A stretch of 64,000 nucleotides of DNA, from the NCBI RefSeq assembly GCF_052425735.1, contig NC_135758.1, positions 36,332,001-36,396,000 on the forward strand, in the 5' to 3' direction. Source of the DNA: Oculina patagonica. Taxonomy: Eukaryota. The position numbers and the translations under genes were made by a program. A model generated the notes under the pieces. The model made no database searches, was not told the origin of the DNA, and saw only the letters and a program-made list of their open reading frames with translations. Below are positions 26,650 to 35,137 of the stretch, piece by piece; positions within the stretch are counted from its first letter, which is position 1, and every line of letters starts with the position of its first letter.

Positions 26650-26970
26650 CTAATGAGAGCCAAGCGACTTTTCCAATCCAAACTCGTACCTGACATTTTG
26701 CAATTCAAGATGAGGAAGGGCAGCAAAATACTCGGCAGGCATTAGCATCACGCAGATACTATTTCTTCGTTGTTGCGTTAGATCGTTCATCGGTGCTGTA
26801 AAATTCTCTAGTCCCCTTATCGGCTTGTTGGTTGGTACGGACTGATTCAGTTTTTCAGCGGGTATTTTGTTGTGGTTTTCCGCTTGCTCTCCAAACTTTC
26901 TCTTTTGTTGAAGATACGGAGAAATTGACTGGGGAAGCAGAAGCCGCTTAGATTTTCCTTGTGGCTCCAT
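26650..26970 (-). CDS. Unknown 106-aa intronless protein (paralog 1 of RRNSIC-LMPAE family)
   Basis: First ATG at 26970 (MEPQGKSK...). Frame is conserved with paralog 2 across an in-frame indel. Upstream CArG, CCAAT and TATA-like motifs; AATAAA (minus strand) at ~26150 is conserved in the duplicate. Confidence 0.7.
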   Translation of the reverse strand: MEPQGKSKRLLLPQSISPYLQQKRKFGEQAENHNKIPAEKLNQSVPTNKPIRGLENFTAPMNDLTQQRRNSICVMLMPAEYFAALPHLELQNVRYEFGLEKSLGSH

Positions 26971-27133
26971 AGGATTGCAACGACTCGCCAGCAAGGAAGA
27001 ACTGGACTGCTTAGTATTGCACAATTTACGATGAAGAAGCGGACATGCAAAGAATCATATAATTGGCATCTTTGGAGCCAATAGGAGTTGGGAAAGACGA
27101 GATCTTGCGCAAGAGAGAACAGTGTAAACAGCA

Positions 27134-27170
27134 CCAAATAAGGCACCGTCCTGCGGTACAAATAACCAAT
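27134..27170. promoter_or_regulatory. CArG box (CCAAATAAGG) + CCAAT module upstream of paralog 1
   Basis: Exact CC(A/T)6GG at 27134-27143 and CCAAT at 27166-27170. The module recurs at 30813-30849 and 31077-31115. Confidence 0.55.
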
Positions 27171-27356
27171 CACAATCAACGGCTAATCATGCATGACTCA
27201 AAATGCAAACAATTCACAGTGCCTACTAGCCAAAACAGAAAAGTCCTATCGGAGGGCAACCATAACACAAAATCCCTTCATTTTGCTACCCTAACACAAA
27301 ACGCCTTATTTTGTTACACGCTTTAAAAGAGGTCAATCCAGGCATCCCACAGTGAT

Positions 27357-29245
27357 GTCAAGTGTTGCAAGGTCAAAGTTTCCCACGTGCGACGCGCGAG
27401 AGATCTGGGTGACGGCTTCTCTTACACGTGTATGTTTATGTAACAAGTGTCAATTATGTAACTGGAGTTCGGTAATATTAGATCGAAAGAAAAACTCACA
27501 CAGTTTTGTCAAGTGTCGGAATTCGAAGGTCAAAGTTTCCAACGTGTGACGCGCGAGAGATCTGGTGACGGCTTTTATTACACGTGTATGATTGTGTAAT
27601 GTCAATTATGAAACTAGAGATCGGGTAATATTAGATCGATAAAAAACTCTCACGGTGTTGTCAAGGGACGAAAGGTCAAAGTCCCGGGTCAAAGTTTCCC
27701 ATGTGCGACGCGTGAGAGATCTGGTGACCGCTTCTATTACACGTGTATGATTATGTAAGATGATTATGTAACAAATGTCAATAGGCCATTTCCGAGTTAC
27801 CCTTTGCCTCTGTTTCAAAACGAGTCTACGTGCGAAACTATTCAAATGAAAATGAGTTTGACTTGCATGAAAATGGGCCTGAAGGTGAAACTCATTTTCA
27901 TATAAATGGTTTCGCACGTAGACTCGCTTTGAGACAGAGGCAAAGGGTAACTCGGAAATGGCCTATTATGTAACTAGAGATCGGGTAATATTAGATCAGT
28001 AGAAATGCTCACACGGTGTTGTCAAGGGTCGGAAGGTCAAAGTTTCCCACGTGTGACACGCGATGGATCTGGTGACGGCTTTAGTTACACGTGTATGATT
28101 ATGTAAAACGATTATGTAACAAATGTCAATTATGTAACTAGAGATCGGGTAATATTGGGTTGATAGAAAAACTCACACGGTGTTGTCAAGTGTCTAAAGG
28201 TCGAGGTTTTCCACATGCGACGCGCGAGAGATCTGGTTACGGCTTGTATGATTATGTTCTGGTGATTATATAACAAATGTCAATAATGTAACTAGAGATC
28301 GGGTAATATTGGGTTGATAGAAAAACTCATACGGTGATGTCAAGTGTCTAAAGGTCGAAGTTTACCACATGCGACGCGCGAGAGATCTGGTGACCGCTTC
28401 TATTACACGTGTATGATTATGTAACAAATGACAATTATGTAACTAGAGATCAAACGGTGATGTCAAGTGTCTGAAGGTCAAAGTTTCCCACGTGCGACGC
28501 GCGAGGGATTCCATTACACGTGTATGATTATGTAAGACGATTATGCAATGTCAATTATGTAACTAGATCGGGTAATATTATATTAGATCGATAGAAAAAA
28601 ATTCACACTGTGGTGTCAAGTGTCTGAAGGTCAAGGTTTCCTTCGTGGGACGTGCGAAAATGGTATGACGGCTTCAATTACACGTGTATGATTATGTAAG
28701 ACGATTGTGTAACAAATGCCAATTATGTAACTGGAGTTCGGGTAATATTGGGTTGATAGAAAAACTCACACGGTGTTGTCAAGTGTCTGAAGGTCAAAGT
28801 TTCCCACGTGTGACGCGCGAGAGATCTGGTGACGGCTTTTATTACACGTGTATGATTATGTAAGACGATTGTGTAACAAATGCCAATTATGTAACTAGAG
28901 ATCGGGTAATATTGGGTTGATAGAAAAACTCACACGGTGTTGTCAAGTGTCTGAAGGTCAAAGTTTCCCACGTGCGACGCGCGAGAGATCTGGTGACGGC
29001 TTTTATTACACGTATATGATTATGTAAGATGATTATGTAATGTCAATTATGAAACTAGAGATCGGGTAATATTAGATCGATAGAAAAACTCACACTGTGT
29101 TGTCAAGGGTCGGAAGGTAAAAGTTTCCACGTGCGACACGCGAGGGATCTGGTGACGGCTTCTATTTCACGTGTATGATTATGTAAGGTGATTATGAGTG
29201 TCAATTATGTAACTAGAGATCGGGTAATATTAGATCGATAGAAAA
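27357..29245. repeat. Minisatellite, ~11 units of ~160 bp, rich in CACGTG and ATTATGTAA
   Basis: Unit gtcaagtgtctgaaggtcaaagtttcccacgtg.gacgcgcgagagatctggtgacggctt..attacacgtgtatgattatgtaa..caattatgtaactagagatcgggtaatatt; for example, 28779 to 28942 is 163 bp. Confidence 0.9.
27781..27966. mobile_element. Palindromic MITE inserted into one minisatellite unit
   Basis: ataggccatttccgagttaccctttgcctctg...cagaggcaaagggtaactcggaaatggcctat interrupts the unit motif tcaattatgtaac. A partial relative lies at ~5928-6000. Confidence 0.8.
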
Positions 29246-30344: not shown

Positions 30345-30671
30345 TTAATCAGTGTCAAGCGACTTTTCCAAACCAAACTCGTACCTGACATTTAACAATT
30401 CAAGATGAGGAAGGGCAGCAAAATACTCGGCAGGCATTAGCATCACGCAGATACTATTTCTTCGTTGTTGCTGTGGATCGTTCATCGATGATGTAACACT
30501 TTCGGGTCCCCTCATCGGCTTGTTGCTTGGTGGAGACTGATTCATCTTTTCAGCGGGTATTTTGTACTCTTTTCCTTCTTGCTTTCTGATCTTTTTCTTC
30601 CGTTGGAAATACGGAGAACTTGACAGAGGTGGAAGATAAAGTGGCCGTTTAGATTTCTCGTGTGGCTCCAT
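30345..30671 (-). CDS. Unknown 108-aa intronless protein (paralog 2 of RRNSIC-LMPAE family)
   Basis: First ATG at 30671 (MEPHEKSK...). The C-terminal QQRRNSICVMLMPAEYFAALPHLEL.NVRYEFGLEKSL is shared with paralog 1. The duplication extends through promoter and 3' flank (~26100-27180 vs ~29790-30855). Confidence 0.7.
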   Translation of the reverse strand: MEPHEKSKRPLYLPPLSSSPYFQRKKKIRKQEGKEYKIPAEKMNQSPPSNKPMRGPESVTSSMNDPQQQRRNSICVMLMPAEYFAALPHLELLNVRYEFGLEKSLDTD

Positions 30672-30812
30672 GGGCTTGCTACGGCAAGTGCGGTCGGCAA
30701 GGAAGAATGATTGCTCAGTACTGTACAATGTATGGTGAAAAATCGGGCGTTCAAAGAATTATATGAGCTGAAAAAGGAAGTTCTTACGCACGTCGAACAG
30801 TGAAAAATAACA

Positions 30813-31115
30813 CCAAATAAGGCACCGGCCTGCGCTACAAATAACCAATCACAACCTGTTCTTTTGATGTAAAGCGCATGCTTGCGTATAAACCATAATT
30901 TCATCGTATGTCAGTTATTACACCAACTTTGGGTAGTAGTGAAGCGTGAAGCAACTACAAAAAGTAAATATTTTAATATCGTTGTAAAAGACGACCCTTT
31001 GTGCAACAAAACAGAAAACTTAAAACATTCGAGGCTAAGGAAAACTGAGAACTTATACTCGTGGCGGAAGGCCAACCCAAATAAGGCACACTGTCCCGCG
31101 CTTCAAATAGCCAAT
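30813..31115. promoter_or_regulatory. Two CArG + CCAAT modules upstream of paralog 2
   Basis: CCAAATAAGG at 30813 and 31077; CCAAT at 30845 and 31111. Confidence 0.5.
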
Positions 31116-32034
31116 CACAAGCAGGTTGTTTTCTATGTCATGCGCAGGCATATATTTATCATGAGACTTCCATGAGACTGCAAGCTGTTCCTTTTAATCA
31201 GACGTGCGGGCGCAAACGCAAGCGAACAACTATGAGCCGAGCGAGAACTGGAGGAGAGAAGAAAAAAAGGACAATATTAGTTTATTTTTAACATGTAGGA
31301 TTATCTGAATACGTCTCTTACAGAAAAGGTTGCTATTTCTTTTTCTTTTCGCTTTGCTCGCCCGATCGTTGCGTTTTCTTGTTTTTGCCCGCTCGACTGA
31401 CTGAAAAGCTAAGGGACAGCTATCAGTCTAGTATGTTTTTTTAAATCACCATAAGCCTCCTGTTTTAAAGAAAATTCGTTTTTTTATGTGAAACAGCAAA
31501 ATAGGAATACTCGGAAATTGCACAGGGCGGCGGAGCAGGGGGGGTCAGGGAGGCGCTGTAGCCACGTTTTGGTGCCGAAATATTCCGTCTCGTGAGTGAG
31601 TTCAAACATCTTCGGAACTTCCTTGGAAGTCTTCGGGAAACTTCGTTTATCTTCGGAAAAGTTTGAAAAACGATCGGAAATGTTCGCATTGCCTTCGAAC
31701 AGCAATCGGAGAATCTTCAGAAATCTTCGGTCTAGAAACTGCTCAGAAAACAAAAAGTTGCTAGCACGGAAAAAAGTTGCTTCAAATATGAAAACTTGCC
31801 GAGTATTTTTGGGACAGTCTTAGCCCTCCACGTTCCGAAACGCCCCGCCGCCTAAACGTTGTAAGAAAAAAGCTAAAAAAACGTCACAGAAAGTGACCAA
31901 AAATCCTTAATTTACACACAATTGAAACAGCCCGCGAAATGCATTTGAATGAAACTGTACGCGTAAACATACCAGTTAATATTGTTAATGTTTTTCCCTT
32001 CGCACAGTAACAAGACTTGGTTGGCATGTTACGT

Positions 32035-33019
32035 TTAAATCAGATCTGTACCTGACAGCACACTCAGCAGCTCAAGATAAGGAATGGCTCGAAGATGCTC
32101 GGCGGGCATCAACGCCGCACAAATAGCATTTCTCCTATGCTTTGAACCAACAAGCCACCCTGTAGGACTTTCACTTTCACTGCCTGTCAACTCATCAGCG
32201 GAAATTTCCCCTCCGTTTGATTTAGCAATATCACAGCATTGTCTCTTTCGTAGAAAACGCGGTGACCATGATTTCTTCAAAGCACTTTCGTTTGGTGACT
32301 TCACTGATAAAAGGCCATCATCGCACACAACGATCTCTGGATTGCTGGGATGTTCAGAAGAACTTCCACTGAACTGTTTACTGGAGGAAATGTCCTCATG
32401 ACAGTTCCTCTTCCGTAGAAAACGCGGTGACCATGATTTCTTCAATCCATTTTCACTTGGTGACTCGGGTGGTGACTTCACCGTTAAAAGGCCATCATCG
32501 CACACAACGATCTCTGGATTGCTGGGATGTTCAGAAAAACTTCCACTGATCTGTTTACTGGAGGAAATTTCCTCATGACAGTTCCTCTTCCGTAGAAAAC
32601 GCGGTGACCATGATTTCTTCAATCCATTTTCACTTGGTGACTCGGGTGGTGACTTCACCGTTAAAAGGCCATCATCGCACACAACGATCTCTGGATTGCT
32701 GGGATATTCAGAAGAACTTCCACCGACTTGTTTACTCGAGAAAATTTCTTCATTGGCATTTCCTCTTCTGTAGAAAACGTGGTGACCATGATTTCTTCAA
32801 AGTATCTTTGCTAGGTGTCTCCACTTGTAAATAGCCATCGTCACATAGGACGATCTCTGGATTGCTGGGATGTTCGGAGGAGCATTCGCTAATGTCACTA
32901 GCCTGCTTGCTCTCTGCAAGTTCCTCCACATTTGATTCAGCATCGTCATGGTATTTCTCCTTTCGTGGGAAACGTGGTGACATTGATTTCGTCGAAGTAT
33001 TTTCGCTTCCTGGACCCAT
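32035..33019 (-). CDS. Unknown ~327-aa repeat protein (paralog 3, RRNAIC variant); +1 frameshift at ~32753 as assembled
   Basis: ORFs 32750-33019 and 32035-32682 join if one extra A is removed (tgccAatgaa vs tgtcatgag in the sister repeats). Contains 180-bp/60-aa repeats and ends HRRNAICAALMPAEHLRAIPYLELL. A CRE-TATA-Inr promoter lies upstream. Confidence 0.65.
32245..32990 (-). repeat. Coding tandem repeat, 180-bp period
   Basis: SEHPSNPEIVVCDDGLL.VKSP....LKKSWSPRFLRKR is repeated; the near-identical units at ~32399 and ~32579 are 180 bp apart. Confidence 0.85.
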
Positions 33020-33110
33020 TGGTAAAAGGCAGTTGTCACATAGGACGATCTCGATTGATCAAGAAATTTGCACGTTAAAAAAAAAAAAAACAGAGCGAAG
33101 GCAAAGTCGC

Positions 33111-33174
33111 AACTGATGACACTGAAAAGTTGTTGTTACTTTATATGTTGTTTTTGATTTTCACAATGACGTCA
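33111..33174 (-). promoter_or_regulatory. CRE - TATA box - initiator core promoter for paralog 3
   Basis: TGACGTCA at 33167-33174, TATAAA at 33145-33140 and TCAGTT at 33116-33111. The Inr A at 33114 places the TATA box at -31. Confidence 0.65.
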
Positions 33175-33244
33175 CTTGTCTTTCGAAAACCAATCGATTT
33201 CCTCGACCATAATCCCTCTGGTATTAAAAAATAAAGAAAAAGCG

Positions 33245-33451
33245 AAACGTGGTGACCTTTAAATTCTTCAAAGTATGTTTGCTTCCTAGATCCATTGGTA
33301 AACGGCAGTTATTACACAGGGCGATCTCGATTGATCAAGAAATTAAAAAAAAAAAACAGATCAAGGGCAAAGTCGCAACTAATGAAAATAAAAAATTGGT
33401 TGTTTTCTTCCCTAGTTGTTGTTTTTTTTCGTTATTTTTACAATGACGTCA
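33245..33451. repeat. Degenerate duplication of the paralog-3 5' end and promoter
   Basis: Aligns with ~32968-33174 (gaaacgtggtgac..ccattggtaaa.ggcagtt..cgatctcgattgatcaagaaatt..ggcaaagtcgcaact). It keeps TGACGTCA at 33444 but has lost TATAAA. Confidence 0.75.
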
Positions 33452-34376
33452 TCGTGCTAATTGGGTAATTGTAATAATAATACAACCGGCATTTAGAAAT
33501 TTAAATAAGAATGGCGACCTACGTACATACCTGTTGTTGTTTTTGTAATGAAAACACCTTTACAAGTATTTTTATCCATTAGTACATTAATAACTTTATG
33601 TTGGAGGGCAAGGAACGTACTGAAAGAAAATAACCCAAGGTCTAGCGAACCGAGCTGTGGCCCGCGTTTTGCCTGCCCTTGGGCATTAACATCGCTCATG
33701 ATGCCCTTGAACATAACGGAAATATCCGGTCCCGATTGAGACTATTAACCAATCAAATCGCGTGATATATGCAGCCTAGTACCCAGGTGTTCTCTCGTTT
33801 TATTTAACGCGCGAAGCCTGAAACTGGGATCTCGTTGTTAAAAACTCGTTGACCTGCAACGCGTTTAACAAAAACCGCCGAACGCTAACCTGATTCCGAT
33901 GGAAATTTGTCAGGCCTTTTACTGTACCTGAATTTACTCTATATACCTGGAGCCGAGCTGGGGAACCACGCATAAGGACTGTAAACAATACAAAAATAAA
34001 ACTTTATTTACAGACTGATGCTTGAGGATACACCGACTATTATTTTTCTTTTGCTCCTATGTAAGACTGATTACAAAACTTCACATCCACATTTGCATGA
34101 AGTGATGACTATAAGGGTACAAGAGATACAGTGGAGATAACAGTATTTTTTATCCTTTTTTATCCTTTTATTCCCAAATAAGTGAACCGTCTTTCTTCGT
34201 TTTGGTGTTCAAGATCTGTTCCAGAATACAAAACCCACGTTTAAAAAGTAAAACGTCCGCTTCAAACCCTTGTCACATCTACCTTCAGCACAGAAGATTT
34301 CTTTCAAGACGTTCTCGTTTTTGCGGATCCGTCGTTCTTACAGGTCAGCAACACGTTTGCTCATGCGTACTGATTC

Positions 34377-35137
34377 TTAGTCCGTGGGAGGTCCTTCACC
34401 GATCTCGTAAAAAAGACTTCGCACATCCAACATGGAAGCCAGTTCAAGAACTTGCTTCTCTATGCTGCCGTTGAGTAAAATTTCTGCCGCTGGCAGCTTA
34501 GGGAAGCTCTTCGGGTAGTAGTCGGAACCCTGAAAAAAAAAGACAAGTAAATAAACAAAGACTTTGGGAAAACAATGCCAAAATTTATTGACTTCCATGT
34601 AGCCAAGAATAGTTACGTAGTAAAACCGGCATGGACTGAAAATAAGGAAGATAAAAGTCTGTTAAGGGCCGATTGATACGGGACGACTTTCTCGCATGCG
34701 ACACTGTCACCAGCAAAGTGCGATCGTATTTCATAAAAACCTGATTCGTAACAGTACTGCTTACAATCTCAGACTCTCTACAATTAAGCACTCCAGAAAC
34801 ACTGGGATTTTCTTCCAAAAGCGTTCAAATCAGACCAGTCTCTTGAGTCGTTTATTGTAAATCTTTATTCTCTTGTCTTAACGCACAAAAAATAAAAAAT
34901 AAAAACTTTATTTATCCTGAAGGGCCAATCAGTGATCATTAGATCACTGGTATGAACTGGCGATCAGCATTAAGTATAAAATACATCTATTCTTAAAATA
35001 CAATTGCAGTTAACCAGAGTATTTTTTTCCATTTCTGTAAAGAAATTTTGTTATTGTAGTTTTTTTAGTAAATTCTTAGCACGGCTTTCTTAGAACCCAA
35101 TTCTTTGTAACTGAAGAGATTCCGTGTGGAAATGAAA

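What the first reader, a model, noticed from the sequence alone, without database searches (positions are those of the whole stretch)
33111..33451. Canonically spaced CRE-TATA-Inr promoter in front of the putative PKA inhibitor: possible negative-feedback loop
Seen: a palindromic CRE (33167-33174) lies 21 bp from TATAAA, which is at -31 relative to the A of a TCAGTT initiator, ~95 nt before the ATG. A local duplication supplies a second CRE (33444-33451); that copy has lost TATA and Inr but kept the CRE. Known: CRE plus TATA marks strongly cAMP/CREB-inducible genes. Inference: PKA activates CREB, which induces a PKA inhibitor. Caveat: isolated TGACGTCA also occurs at ~4213 and ~42209.
Basis: partly seen in the sequence, partly recalled or inferred. 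Interest (0 to 1): 0.72.

Follow-up and report, generated by a model that had tools for sequence, protein, structure and literature searches.

The report
Conserved CRE promoter, coral orphan gene
A cAMP-response element (TGACGTCA) in front of a coral-only gene is the best-conserved piece of that gene's upstream DNA in nine promoters from about six coral lineages, so it is very likely a real control switch. The transcription start, the cAMP response and the proposed feedback on protein kinase A remain untested.

Summary

One CRE here is not beyond chance. The Oculina genome carries TGACGTCA once per 14 kb, which predicts about 4.5 per window; 4 are seen.

Conservation is what decides it. I fetched promoters of this gene type from other corals. 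TGACGT.A is the only invariant block across nine promoters. It is also the top-scoring 8-, 12- and 18-nt window of the promoter alignment. One distant homolog has three full CREs plus a TGACGTAA variant within 120 bp.

- **Core promoter:** an inverted CCAAT box, an A/T box at -31 to -34 and an initiator block are shared by the closer lineages only.
- **Start site:** no TSS data exist, and one depth-2 RNA-like contig crosses the predicted start.
- **PKA side:** the protein is not a Pfam PKI member, PKA inhibition is untested, and other bZIP factors also bind CREs.

Verdict: a real, conserved CRE-type promoter of a known kind. The PKA feedback loop is a testable hypothesis, not a finding. The scan has not reported this on other DNA.

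The parts
33167..33174 (-). Proximal full palindromic CRE TGACGTCA, at -60 to -53 of the predicted start.
   Evidence: It is the only invariant block (TGACGT.A) across nine homologous promoters. It is also the top conserved window of alignment A1.
33157..33166 (-). Conserved 3' flank of the CRE (TTGTGAAAAT), possibly a C/EBP-like half-site.
   Evidence: The 18-nt block TGACGTCATTGTGAAAAT scores 0.96 mean conservation. The C/EBP reading is my inference.
33190..33194 (-). Inverted CCAAT box (ATTGG within cgATTGGtt), at -80 to -76.
   Evidence: Read. GATTGGTT is shared with L006 and L009 about 13 nt upstream of their CRE. It is deleted in the distal copy.
33140..33145 (-). TATAAA box, first T at -31.
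   Evidence: The same position holds TTTAAA in L003 and TTTACA in L021. L006 and L009 have ATAAAAAG at -35.
33101..33119 (-). Initiator-like conserved block TCATCAGTTGCGACTTTGC. The predicted +1 is the A at 33114.
   Evidence: Second-best conserved 18-nt window (0.86). No experimental TSS.
33020..33114 (-). Predicted 95-nt 5' UTR. It contains a T14 run (33077-33090) and a stretch derived from the coding repeat unit.
   Evidence: repeat family D4. The GATCAATCG...ACTGCCGTTTA.CAATG blocks are conserved in orthologs.
33017..33019 (-). Conserved start codon of the P3-type gene.
   Evidence: Orthologs start at the same place. The NCBI model ACROYT_G003111 instead starts at ATG 32983.
32983..33174 (-). 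Proximal copy of the 277-bp tandem duplication (CRE through the first ~36 nt of the CDS).
33259..33451 (-). Distal, decaying copy. It keeps the CRE (33444-33451) and the initiator block (33368-33385), has ATG 33293-33295 followed by a 23-codon dead ORF, and has lost the TATA box and the CCAAT-inverted block.
33497..33527 (-). Conserved upstream module: an ACGT-core site (TGTACGTAGGT; TTTACGTAGGT or TTTACGTAGTT in orthologs) followed by TCTTATTTAAATTT. It lies upstream of the distal copy only.
   Evidence: Conserved windows scoring 0.83 and 0.89. This shows the distal copy keeps the ancestral upstream flank.
32035..33019 (-). The driven gene (P3-type): three ~59-aa KKSWSPRFLRKR repeats and an RRNAIC tail. 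In this assembly a +1 frameshift at about 32753 interrupts it.

Best explanation
The stretch is the proximal promoter of the third ('P3-type') member of a coral-specific cluster of small-protein genes. Its key element is a functional bZIP-binding CRE.

**Layout on the minus strand:** inverted CCAAT box (about -80), full CRE (-60 to -53), TATAAA (-31), initiator-like TCA(+1)GTT, a 95-nt leader, and the conserved ATG.

**Shown:**
- The motifs and their spacing.
- Conservation of the CRE across about six coral lineages.
- Extra CREs in a distant homolog.
- A CREB-type KID domain encoded in the genome.

**Inferred:**
- A CREB/ATF-class dimer bound at the CRE, helped by NF-Y at the CCAAT box, recruits the TATA-dependent pre-initiation complex.
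- This makes the gene signal-inducible. cAMP/PKA-CREB is the leading candidate signal.
- Transcription starts near 33114.

**The duplication:** Oculina has tandemly duplicated a 277-bp unit running from the CCAAT/CRE region into the first codons. The distal copy keeps the ancestral upstream flank and its CRE but is otherwise decaying. It may act as a second CRE or as a shadow promoter.
For: - Motif positions and spacing.
- Homologous promoters:
  - L003 and L021, two copies in one genome.
  - L004, L005 and L022, run contigs of the same or sister taxa.
  - L006 and L009 (Tara metagenome), L018, L035 and L037.
  - All carry TGACGTCA, or TGACGTAA in L006, at the homologous place.
- In the nine-promoter alignment the only run of invariant columns longer than three is TGACGT.A.
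- In the seven-sequence alignment the CRE block is the best 8-, 12- and 18-nt window at 0.96-0.98. The initiator block and two upstream blocks come next.
- Outside the CDS, only this ~200-bp promoter and a few patches align between Oculina and L003, L006 or L009. The region is therefore constrained.
- L018 (protein 32% identical) has full CREs at -259, -236 and -148 and TGACGTAA at -202. At the genomic density of 7.0e-5 per bp, three full sites in 120 bp has P about 1e-7.
- The A/T box at -31 of the initiator A recurs in L003 and L021, and lies at -34/-35 in L006 and L009.
- The module is unique in the Oculina genome and is not a dispersed repeat.
- A pKID domain scores above the Pfam cut-off in the genome.
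- The upstream neighbour is co-oriented. It ends at an AATAAA-defined poly(A) site near 33985, with no read-through coverage, so this is a separate promoter.
- CRE plus a nearby TATA box is the signature of signal-responsive CREB targets (PMC5740062).
Against: - No TSS, expression or induction data exist. The runs available were contigs only, and none covered the P3 coding region.
- One 261-nt, depth-2 contig of an RNA-like run spans 33024-33283, across the predicted start, TATA box and CRE.
- Logan contigs of orthologs begin 115 to 401 nt upstream of the ATG and include the TATA-like box or the CRE. Their library type is unknown.
- L037 lacks the TATA-initiator block altogether, and L035 has it disrupted.
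- The Oculina gene carries a frameshift in this assembly. The promoter may therefore drive a decaying or alternatively spliced gene.
- The octamer does not identify which bZIP factor binds it.
Confidence: 0.65

Rival explanations
1. The CRE is functional but reports stress, injury, MAPK or circadian signalling rather than cAMP/PKA. The bound factor would be Jun/Fos/ATF2/ATF3/ATF4-type or PAR-bZIP-type, so there would be no PKA-CREB feedback loop.
For: - In Hydra the CRE/ATF motif shows the largest accessibility gain after injury. It is attributed to Jun, Fos, CREB and ATF factors together (PMC8049744).
- Human bZIP pairs from many families bind CRE-class sites (PMC5349851).
- L006 carries the CRE/PAR hybrid TGACGTAA, and so does L018.
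- A second conserved ACGT-core site of PAR-like form (TTACGTAG) lies about 90 nt upstream.
- The conserved flank TTGTGAAAAT resembles a C/EBP half-site. This is my inference.
Against: - The full palindrome TGACGTCA, the optimal CREB/ATF1 site, is the form kept in eight of nine promoters.
- It is paired with a TATA box, as in cAMP-inducible genes (PMC5740062).
- A KID-bearing CREB exists in the genome.
Confidence: 0.3
2. Transcription starts further upstream, either at the distal copy near 33380 or downstream of the conserved TATTTAAA block near 33500. The proximal TATA-initiator pair would then lie inside a long leader, and the proximal CRE would act from within the transcribed region or not at all.
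For: - The depth-2 contig of run X1 covers 33024-33283. It lies downstream of the distal initiator block and runs across the proximal one.
- X1 behaves as an RNA run: its contigs stop at the neighbour's poly(A) site.
- The distal copy keeps the ancestral upstream blocks, the CRE and an initiator block whose CATTAGT core matches L006's.
- Ortholog contigs L004, L022 and L019 extend upstream of the CRE.
Against: - Depth 2 in a run with 586,561 contigs may be genomic or nascent-RNA background.
- Contigs cannot show transcript starts.
- The library type of the Logan runs is unknown, and their contig ends look like repeat breaks.
- The distal copy has lost the TATA and CCAAT blocks. A transcript from it would carry a dead 23-codon upstream ORF.
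- Single-copy orthologs place the same TATA-initiator block directly before a short leader.
Confidence: 0.2
3. The arrangement is a chance co-occurrence of short motifs in A/T-rich DNA derived from a degenerate coding repeat, with no regulatory role.
For: - TGACGTCA is common in this genome, once per 14 kb.
- The leader and the ATG region derive from the 177-bp coding repeat (family D4).
- Retention in the two Oculina copies is not significant (P about 0.12).
Against: - The octamer is invariant at the homologous place in about six lineages.
- It is multiplied in L018.
- The surrounding intergenic DNA no longer aligns.
Confidence: 0.03

Closest known systems
Vertebrate CRE/TATA promoters of signal-inducible CREB targets (somatostatin, c-fos, NR4A, PEPCK class; PMC5740062 and my own knowledge)
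   Same: A full palindromic CRE within 100 bp of the start and a TATA box a few turns downstream. An adjacent CCAAT or C/EBP-like element is also present. The CRE is conserved across species.
   Different: The organism is a coral and the target is a lineage-restricted orphan gene. No occupancy, induction or TSS data exist. The TATA box varies between lineages (TATAAA, TTTAAA, TTTACA, ATAAAAAG) and is absent in one.
ICER P2 promoter of CREM: clustered CREs driving an inducible inhibitor of the same pathway (my own knowledge, not checked in a paper here)
   Same: The four CRE-type sites within 120 bp in homolog L018 resemble ICER's cluster of four CREs.
   Different: ICER is a bZIP repressor acting at the CRE itself. 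Here the product is a disordered repeat protein with an RRNAI motif and unproven activity. Oculina has one CRE per promoter copy.
PKI (cAMP-dependent protein kinase inhibitor, Pfam PF02827; review PMC7723848)
   Same: The gene product ends in an RRNAI(C) core identical to the PKI pseudosubstrate, followed by a hydrophobic, NES-like stretch.
   Different: Pfam gives no PKI match even at E up to 10, and the tail matches no PDB sequence. The motif is C-terminal rather than N-terminal. The protein carries KKSWSPRFLRKR repeats that PKI lacks. No review I read reports CRE-driven induction of PKI.
Hydra injury-responsive CRE/ATF elements (PMC8049744)
   Same: A cnidarian cis-element of the same sequence class, tied to rapid inducible transcription through bZIP factors.
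   Different: Those elements were defined by chromatin accessibility near Wnt-pathway genes after wounding. No such data exist for this coral locus.

Membership tests
CRE/TATA class of cAMP-responsive promoters | Full or half CRE in the proximal promoter (within about 300 bp of the start). | tested here: met
   TGACGTCA lies at -60 to -53 of the predicted start and 155 nt from the ATG. This holds relative to the ATG whatever the exact TSS.
CRE/TATA class of cAMP-responsive promoters | TATA box close downstream of the CRE. | tested here: met
   TATAAA lies 21 nt downstream of the CRE. L003, L021, L006 and L009 have A/T-box variants. L037 has none.
CRE/TATA class of cAMP-responsive promoters | Evolutionary conservation of the CRE. 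| tested here: met
   Invariant TGACGT.A in nine promoters, and the top conserved window.
CRE/TATA class of cAMP-responsive promoters | A CREB with a PKA-phosphorylated KID domain is present in the organism. | tested here: met
   pKID (PF02173) matches at 36.1 bits against a cut-off of 25 at G000 C7:3776045.
CRE/TATA class of cAMP-responsive promoters | CREB/CRTC occupancy and induction by cAMP agonists. | not testable with these tools
   This needs forskolin/IBMX expression series and ChIP or CUT&RUN.
TATA-Inr core promoter | TATA box at -31/-30 relative to an initiator that matches the consensus. | tested here: met
   The first T of TATAAA is at -31 of the A in TCAGTT. That fits the Drosophila-type TCAKTY consensus and matches YYANWYY at 6 of 7 positions.
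TATA-Inr core promoter | An experimentally mapped TSS at the initiator. | tested here: inconclusive
   Only contigs were available. None covers the CDS, and one depth-2 contig crosses the site.
PKI family (PF02827), premise of the feedback loop | Sequence membership in the PKI family. | tested here: not met
   Pfam gives no PKI match for P0001, P0004, P0005 or paralog 2 at E up to 10. The tail of P0004 has no PDB sequence match.
PKI family (PF02827), premise of the feedback loop | A pseudosubstrate R-R-N-A-I with a non-phosphorylatable P0 residue. | tested here: met
   The tail reads HRRNAIC in Oculina, and QRRNAIC or HRRNAIC/HRRNAFC in the closest orthologs. The more distant members P0007 and P0009 have RRSAIC.
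PKI family (PF02827), premise of the feedback loop | Nanomolar inhibition of the PKA catalytic subunit. | not tested
   I could not obtain a coral PKA-C sequence through the permitted routes, so no complex prediction was run.

The most novel reading that the evidence does not exclude
Stony corals evolved, independently of PKI, a small disordered protein with an RRNAI pseudosubstrate tail. Its gene would be switched on by PKA-phosphorylated CREB through an invariant CRE, which some lineages have multiplied to four sites. The result would be an inducible negative-feedback brake on PKA. The logic resembles ICER or PDE4 induction, but the brake would act at the kinase itself.
Probability: 0.13. 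Interest if true: 0.7.

Novelty: new member of a known kind. Interest (0 to 1): 0.45.

Why it matters
cAMP/PKA signalling is implicated in coral responses to light, in calcification, in symbiosis physiology and in spawning. Very few cis-regulatory elements of coral genes have comparative support.

This locus offers an octamer conserved across lineages. It sits in front of a coral-restricted gene whose product carries a PKA pseudosubstrate-like core. That gives a compact, directly testable circuit:
- mutate eight bases in a reporter;
- treat with forskolin;
- assay one peptide.

If the loop holds, it would be a convergently evolved inducible PKA brake. If only the CRE holds, the promoter is still a candidate signal-inducible driver and reporter element for cnidarian work. 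The locus also illustrates promoter evolution by tandem duplication and by gain of extra sites.

Tried and rejected
1. **RNA evidence.** The one run search and the one read-laying run returned Logan contigs only. They show the neighbour's poly(A) end and a transcript of paralog 2. Nothing covers the P3 CDS and they give no TSS, so expression remains open.
2. **Library type of the Logan ortholog contigs** (SRR15959990, 93, 95 and SRR32085968). I could not establish it. No paper cites the runs, the contigs have no poly(A) tails, and their ends sit at repeat boundaries. I therefore did not use their 5' ends as TSS evidence.
3. **Dispersed-repeat hypothesis for the module.** Rejected. There are 7 genomic hits to the 18-nt block against 5 for the control, and the other five hits are unrelated. 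BLAST of the 501-bp stretch 33020-33520 finds only this locus.
4. **Window-level CRE enrichment as evidence.** Rejected, because it equals the genome average.
5. **CRE as a family-wide feature of the neighbouring paralogs.** Oculina P1 and P2 and the L006 P2-type gene have a different conserved promoter (CCAAT-type motif plus TATAATTCT) and no CRE. Only the L007/L008 lineage has a CRE there, inside a ~24-nt insertion.
6. **First reading of L008 as 'CRE absent'.** This was an artefact of a short flank. The longer contig L035 shows the ancestral CRE and leader remnant about 720 nt upstream, separated by insertions.
7. **Metagenome scan with a CRE-plus-initiator pattern.** It found nothing.
8. 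**Complex prediction of the tail with coral PKA-C.** Not run. A Pkinase_C scan of the genome gave AGC-kinase exons, but none was recognisable as PKA-C.
9. **Taxon names of the ortholog assemblies.** Not recoverable.

Full report
**Setting.**
- Earlier notes of this scan name the genome as the coral Oculina patagonica. The NCBI name of the encoded protein agrees: ACROYT_G003111.
- The finding concerns the minus strand upstream of the third of three neighbouring small genes.
  - P1 lies at 26650-27024 and P2 at 30345-30728.
  - P3 lies at 32035-33019.
- P3 encodes about three 59-aa repeats (KKSWSPRFLRKR...) and a tail containing HRRNAIC.

**Observation.** Reading the minus strand confirms every coordinate.
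- The CRE is at 33174-33167.
- A 21-nt spacer separates it from TATAAA at 33145-33140.
- TCAGTT is at 33116-33111, with its A at 33114, so the TATA box is at -31.
- The ATG is at 33019, 95 nt downstream. A script reproduced these distances.
- The second CRE (33451-33444) belongs to a direct duplicate of the unit 32983-33174, offset by 277 bp. The copies are 81% identical.
- The duplicated unit includes a degenerate piece of the 177-bp coding repeat (family D4). The leader and first codons therefore derive from the repeat. Orthologs share this feature, so it is old.

**Is it more than chance?** The octamer alone is not.
- The dinucleotide shuffle expects 0.75 sites per window and 4 are seen.
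- The genome as a whole has 37,197 sites in 529 Mb, three times the reversed-word control. That predicts 4.5 per window.
- A single site in a given 200-bp promoter has about a 1.4% chance.
- Retention in both Oculina copies is also unremarkable (P about 0.12).

**Comparative test.** A protein search found P3-type homologs without names. I fetched their DNA.
- **Start codon.** The orthologs begin at the codon that matches Oculina ATG 33019.
- **CRE at the homologous place.**
  - It is present in L003 and its 111-kb-distant duplicate L021, and in L009, L035 and L037.
  - It is also in run contigs L004 and L022. L005 starts just downstream of the site.
  - L006 has TGACGTAA.
  - L018 (32% protein identity) has three full CREs and one TGACGTAA within 120 bp. 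At the genomic density this has P about 1e-7.
- **Conservation scores.** In the seven-sequence alignment the CRE block is the best-conserved 8-, 12- and 18-nt window (0.96-0.98). In the nine-promoter alignment TGACGT.A is the only invariant run.
- **Constraint.** Between Oculina and these loci, intergenic DNA outside about 200 bp of promoter no longer aligns, apart from a few patches. The promoter is therefore constrained, and the CRE is its most constrained part.
- **Not a repeat.** The module is not a dispersed repeat in the Oculina genome.

**Other elements.**
- An inverted CCAAT box (GATTGGTT) lies about 13 nt upstream of the CRE in the Oculina proximal copy, in L006 and in L009.
- An A/T box lies at -31 (TATAAA, TTTAAA, TTTACA) or at -34/-35 (ATAAAAAG) relative to the A of a conserved CA(Y)(Y)AGT..G(Y)GACTTTG block.
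- Further upstream there is a conserved ACGT-core site (TTTACGTAGGT or TTTACGTAGTT) and a TATTTAAAT block. In Oculina these lie only upstream of the distal copy (33497-33527).
- My reading of the history is that the distal copy holds the ancestral flank, while the proximal copy stays attached to the gene. The distal copy then lost its CCAAT-inverted block and TATA box, and its ORF died. Its initiator block keeps the CATTAGT core seen in L006, so it is not clearly lost.
- The TATA-initiator block is missing in L037 and disrupted in L035. The core promoter is therefore less conserved than the CRE.

**Transcription evidence.**
- The only accessible runs were contigs.
- Three RNA-like runs end at 33985-33989, about 20 nt after an AATAAA at 34009-34004 on the minus strand. 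They therefore behave as RNA, and the upstream neighbour is co-oriented.
- Nothing covers 33322-33925, so there is no read-through.
- Paralog 2 is covered. The P3 coding region is not.
- One 261-nt contig at depth 2 spans 33024-33283, across the predicted start. This may be background, or it may come from a transcript starting at the distal copy.
- No start site can be called from these data.

**Trans side.**
- The genome encodes a pKID domain above the Pfam cut-off, so a PKA-responsive CREB is available.
- CRE-class sites are also bound by Jun, Fos and ATF factors (PMC5349851). In Hydra the CRE/ATF motif is the leading injury-responsive motif (PMC8049744).
- CRE with a nearby TATA box marks signal-responsive CREB targets in mammals (PMC5740062).

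**The product.**
- Pfam gives no PKI match, and the tail matches no PDB sequence. The resemblance to PKI is limited to the RRNAI core and a hydrophobic stretch (PKI features are reviewed in PMC7723848).
- In this assembly the ORF that starts at the conserved ATG is broken by an extra A near 32753, compared with the other repeat units and with the orthologs.
- The NCBI model bridges the break with an 89-nt GT-AG intron and starts at ATG 32983.

**Verdict.**
- The stretch is a real, conserved CRE-bearing promoter, a new member of a known kind.
- I give about 0.65 to a functional CRE-dependent promoter with the proximal core as drawn. This composite figure sits below the CRE-alone term because it also requires the proximal core and start, which are unmapped.
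- I give about 0.3 to the signal being something other than cAMP, and about 0.2 to transcription starting upstream. These two are not exclusive of a functional CRE.
- The full PKA-CREB-inhibitor loop needs three untested links:
  - a functional CRE (about 0.85);
  - cAMP/CREB as the input (about 0.5);
  - PKA inhibition by the product (about 0.3).
- I put the loop at about 0.13.

Noticed in passing
window 32750-32756 (minus strand): An extra A (gccaAtgaag, where the other repeat units have gtcatgagg) shifts the frame. The ORF from the conserved ATG 33019 then stops at 32750. The NCBI model ACROYT_G003111 starts at ATG 32983 and bridges the break with a GT-AG 'intron' (about 32786 to 32698). 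Orthologs have intact three-repeat ORFs.
   Followed up: partly
window 31510-31830: A very high-copy repeat between P3 and P2. Summed contig depth reaches about 47,000 in run X10, with many internal joints and loose ends. It is probably a dispersed element.
   Followed up: no
window 27132-27173, 30811-30852 and a weaker copy near 31070-31117 (minus strand): P1 and P2 share a ~42-nt upstream motif (GTGATTGGTTATTTGTA.CGCAGG.CGGTGCCTTATTTGGTG). The P2-type gene of L006 has it too. Downstream lie TGCGCAAGA and, in Oculina P2, L007 and L008, TATAATTCT (TATATGATTCT in P1; not recognisable in L006). This promoter differs from the P3 promoter and has no CRE.
   Followed up: partly
L007:5280 and L008:1823: In this lineage the P2-type gene has gained a full CRE 6 nt upstream of its TATAATTCT box, inside a ~24-nt insertion. 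L007 also has a TGACATCA beside it. CREs therefore recur on different members of the family.
   Followed up: partly
L035:861-1138: A ~260-bp element with terminal inverted repeats is flanked on both sides by TGACGTCA. This looks like a hAT-type MITE with an 8-bp target-site duplication that landed in a second CRE of that promoter.
   Followed up: no
window 33985-34010 (minus strand): The upstream neighbour gene is co-oriented. It ends at a poly(A) site about 20 nt after AATAAA (34009-34004). Contigs from three RNA-like runs end at 33985-33989. The stretch 34296-34601 is 82% identical to L009:2-291.
   Followed up: partly
whole genome G000: TGACGTCA occurs 37,197 times, against 11,959 for its reversed word, despite containing a CpG. 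That is a roughly three-fold genome-wide excess. It could reflect repeats or widespread use of the site.
   Followed up: no
window 33002-33259: One contig of run X10 (99% identical to the window over its cleanest piece, so probably the same or a sister species) joins 33259 back to 33002 with 16 unrelated letters between. This hints at copy-number or structural variation of the promoter duplication.
   Followed up: no
window 27194-27200 (minus strand): An AP-1/TRE heptamer, TGAGTCA, lies just upstream of the P1 CCAAT-type motif. P2 has none. Nine TGACG half-sites in a single orientation lie in the minisatellite at 27410-29157.
   Followed up: no
L003 and L021 (one contig, 111 kb apart): One other coral genome carries two P3-type copies that are 92% identical over 2 kb. 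Both have the CRE. They differ in the A/T box (TTTAAA versus TTTACA).
   Followed up: partly
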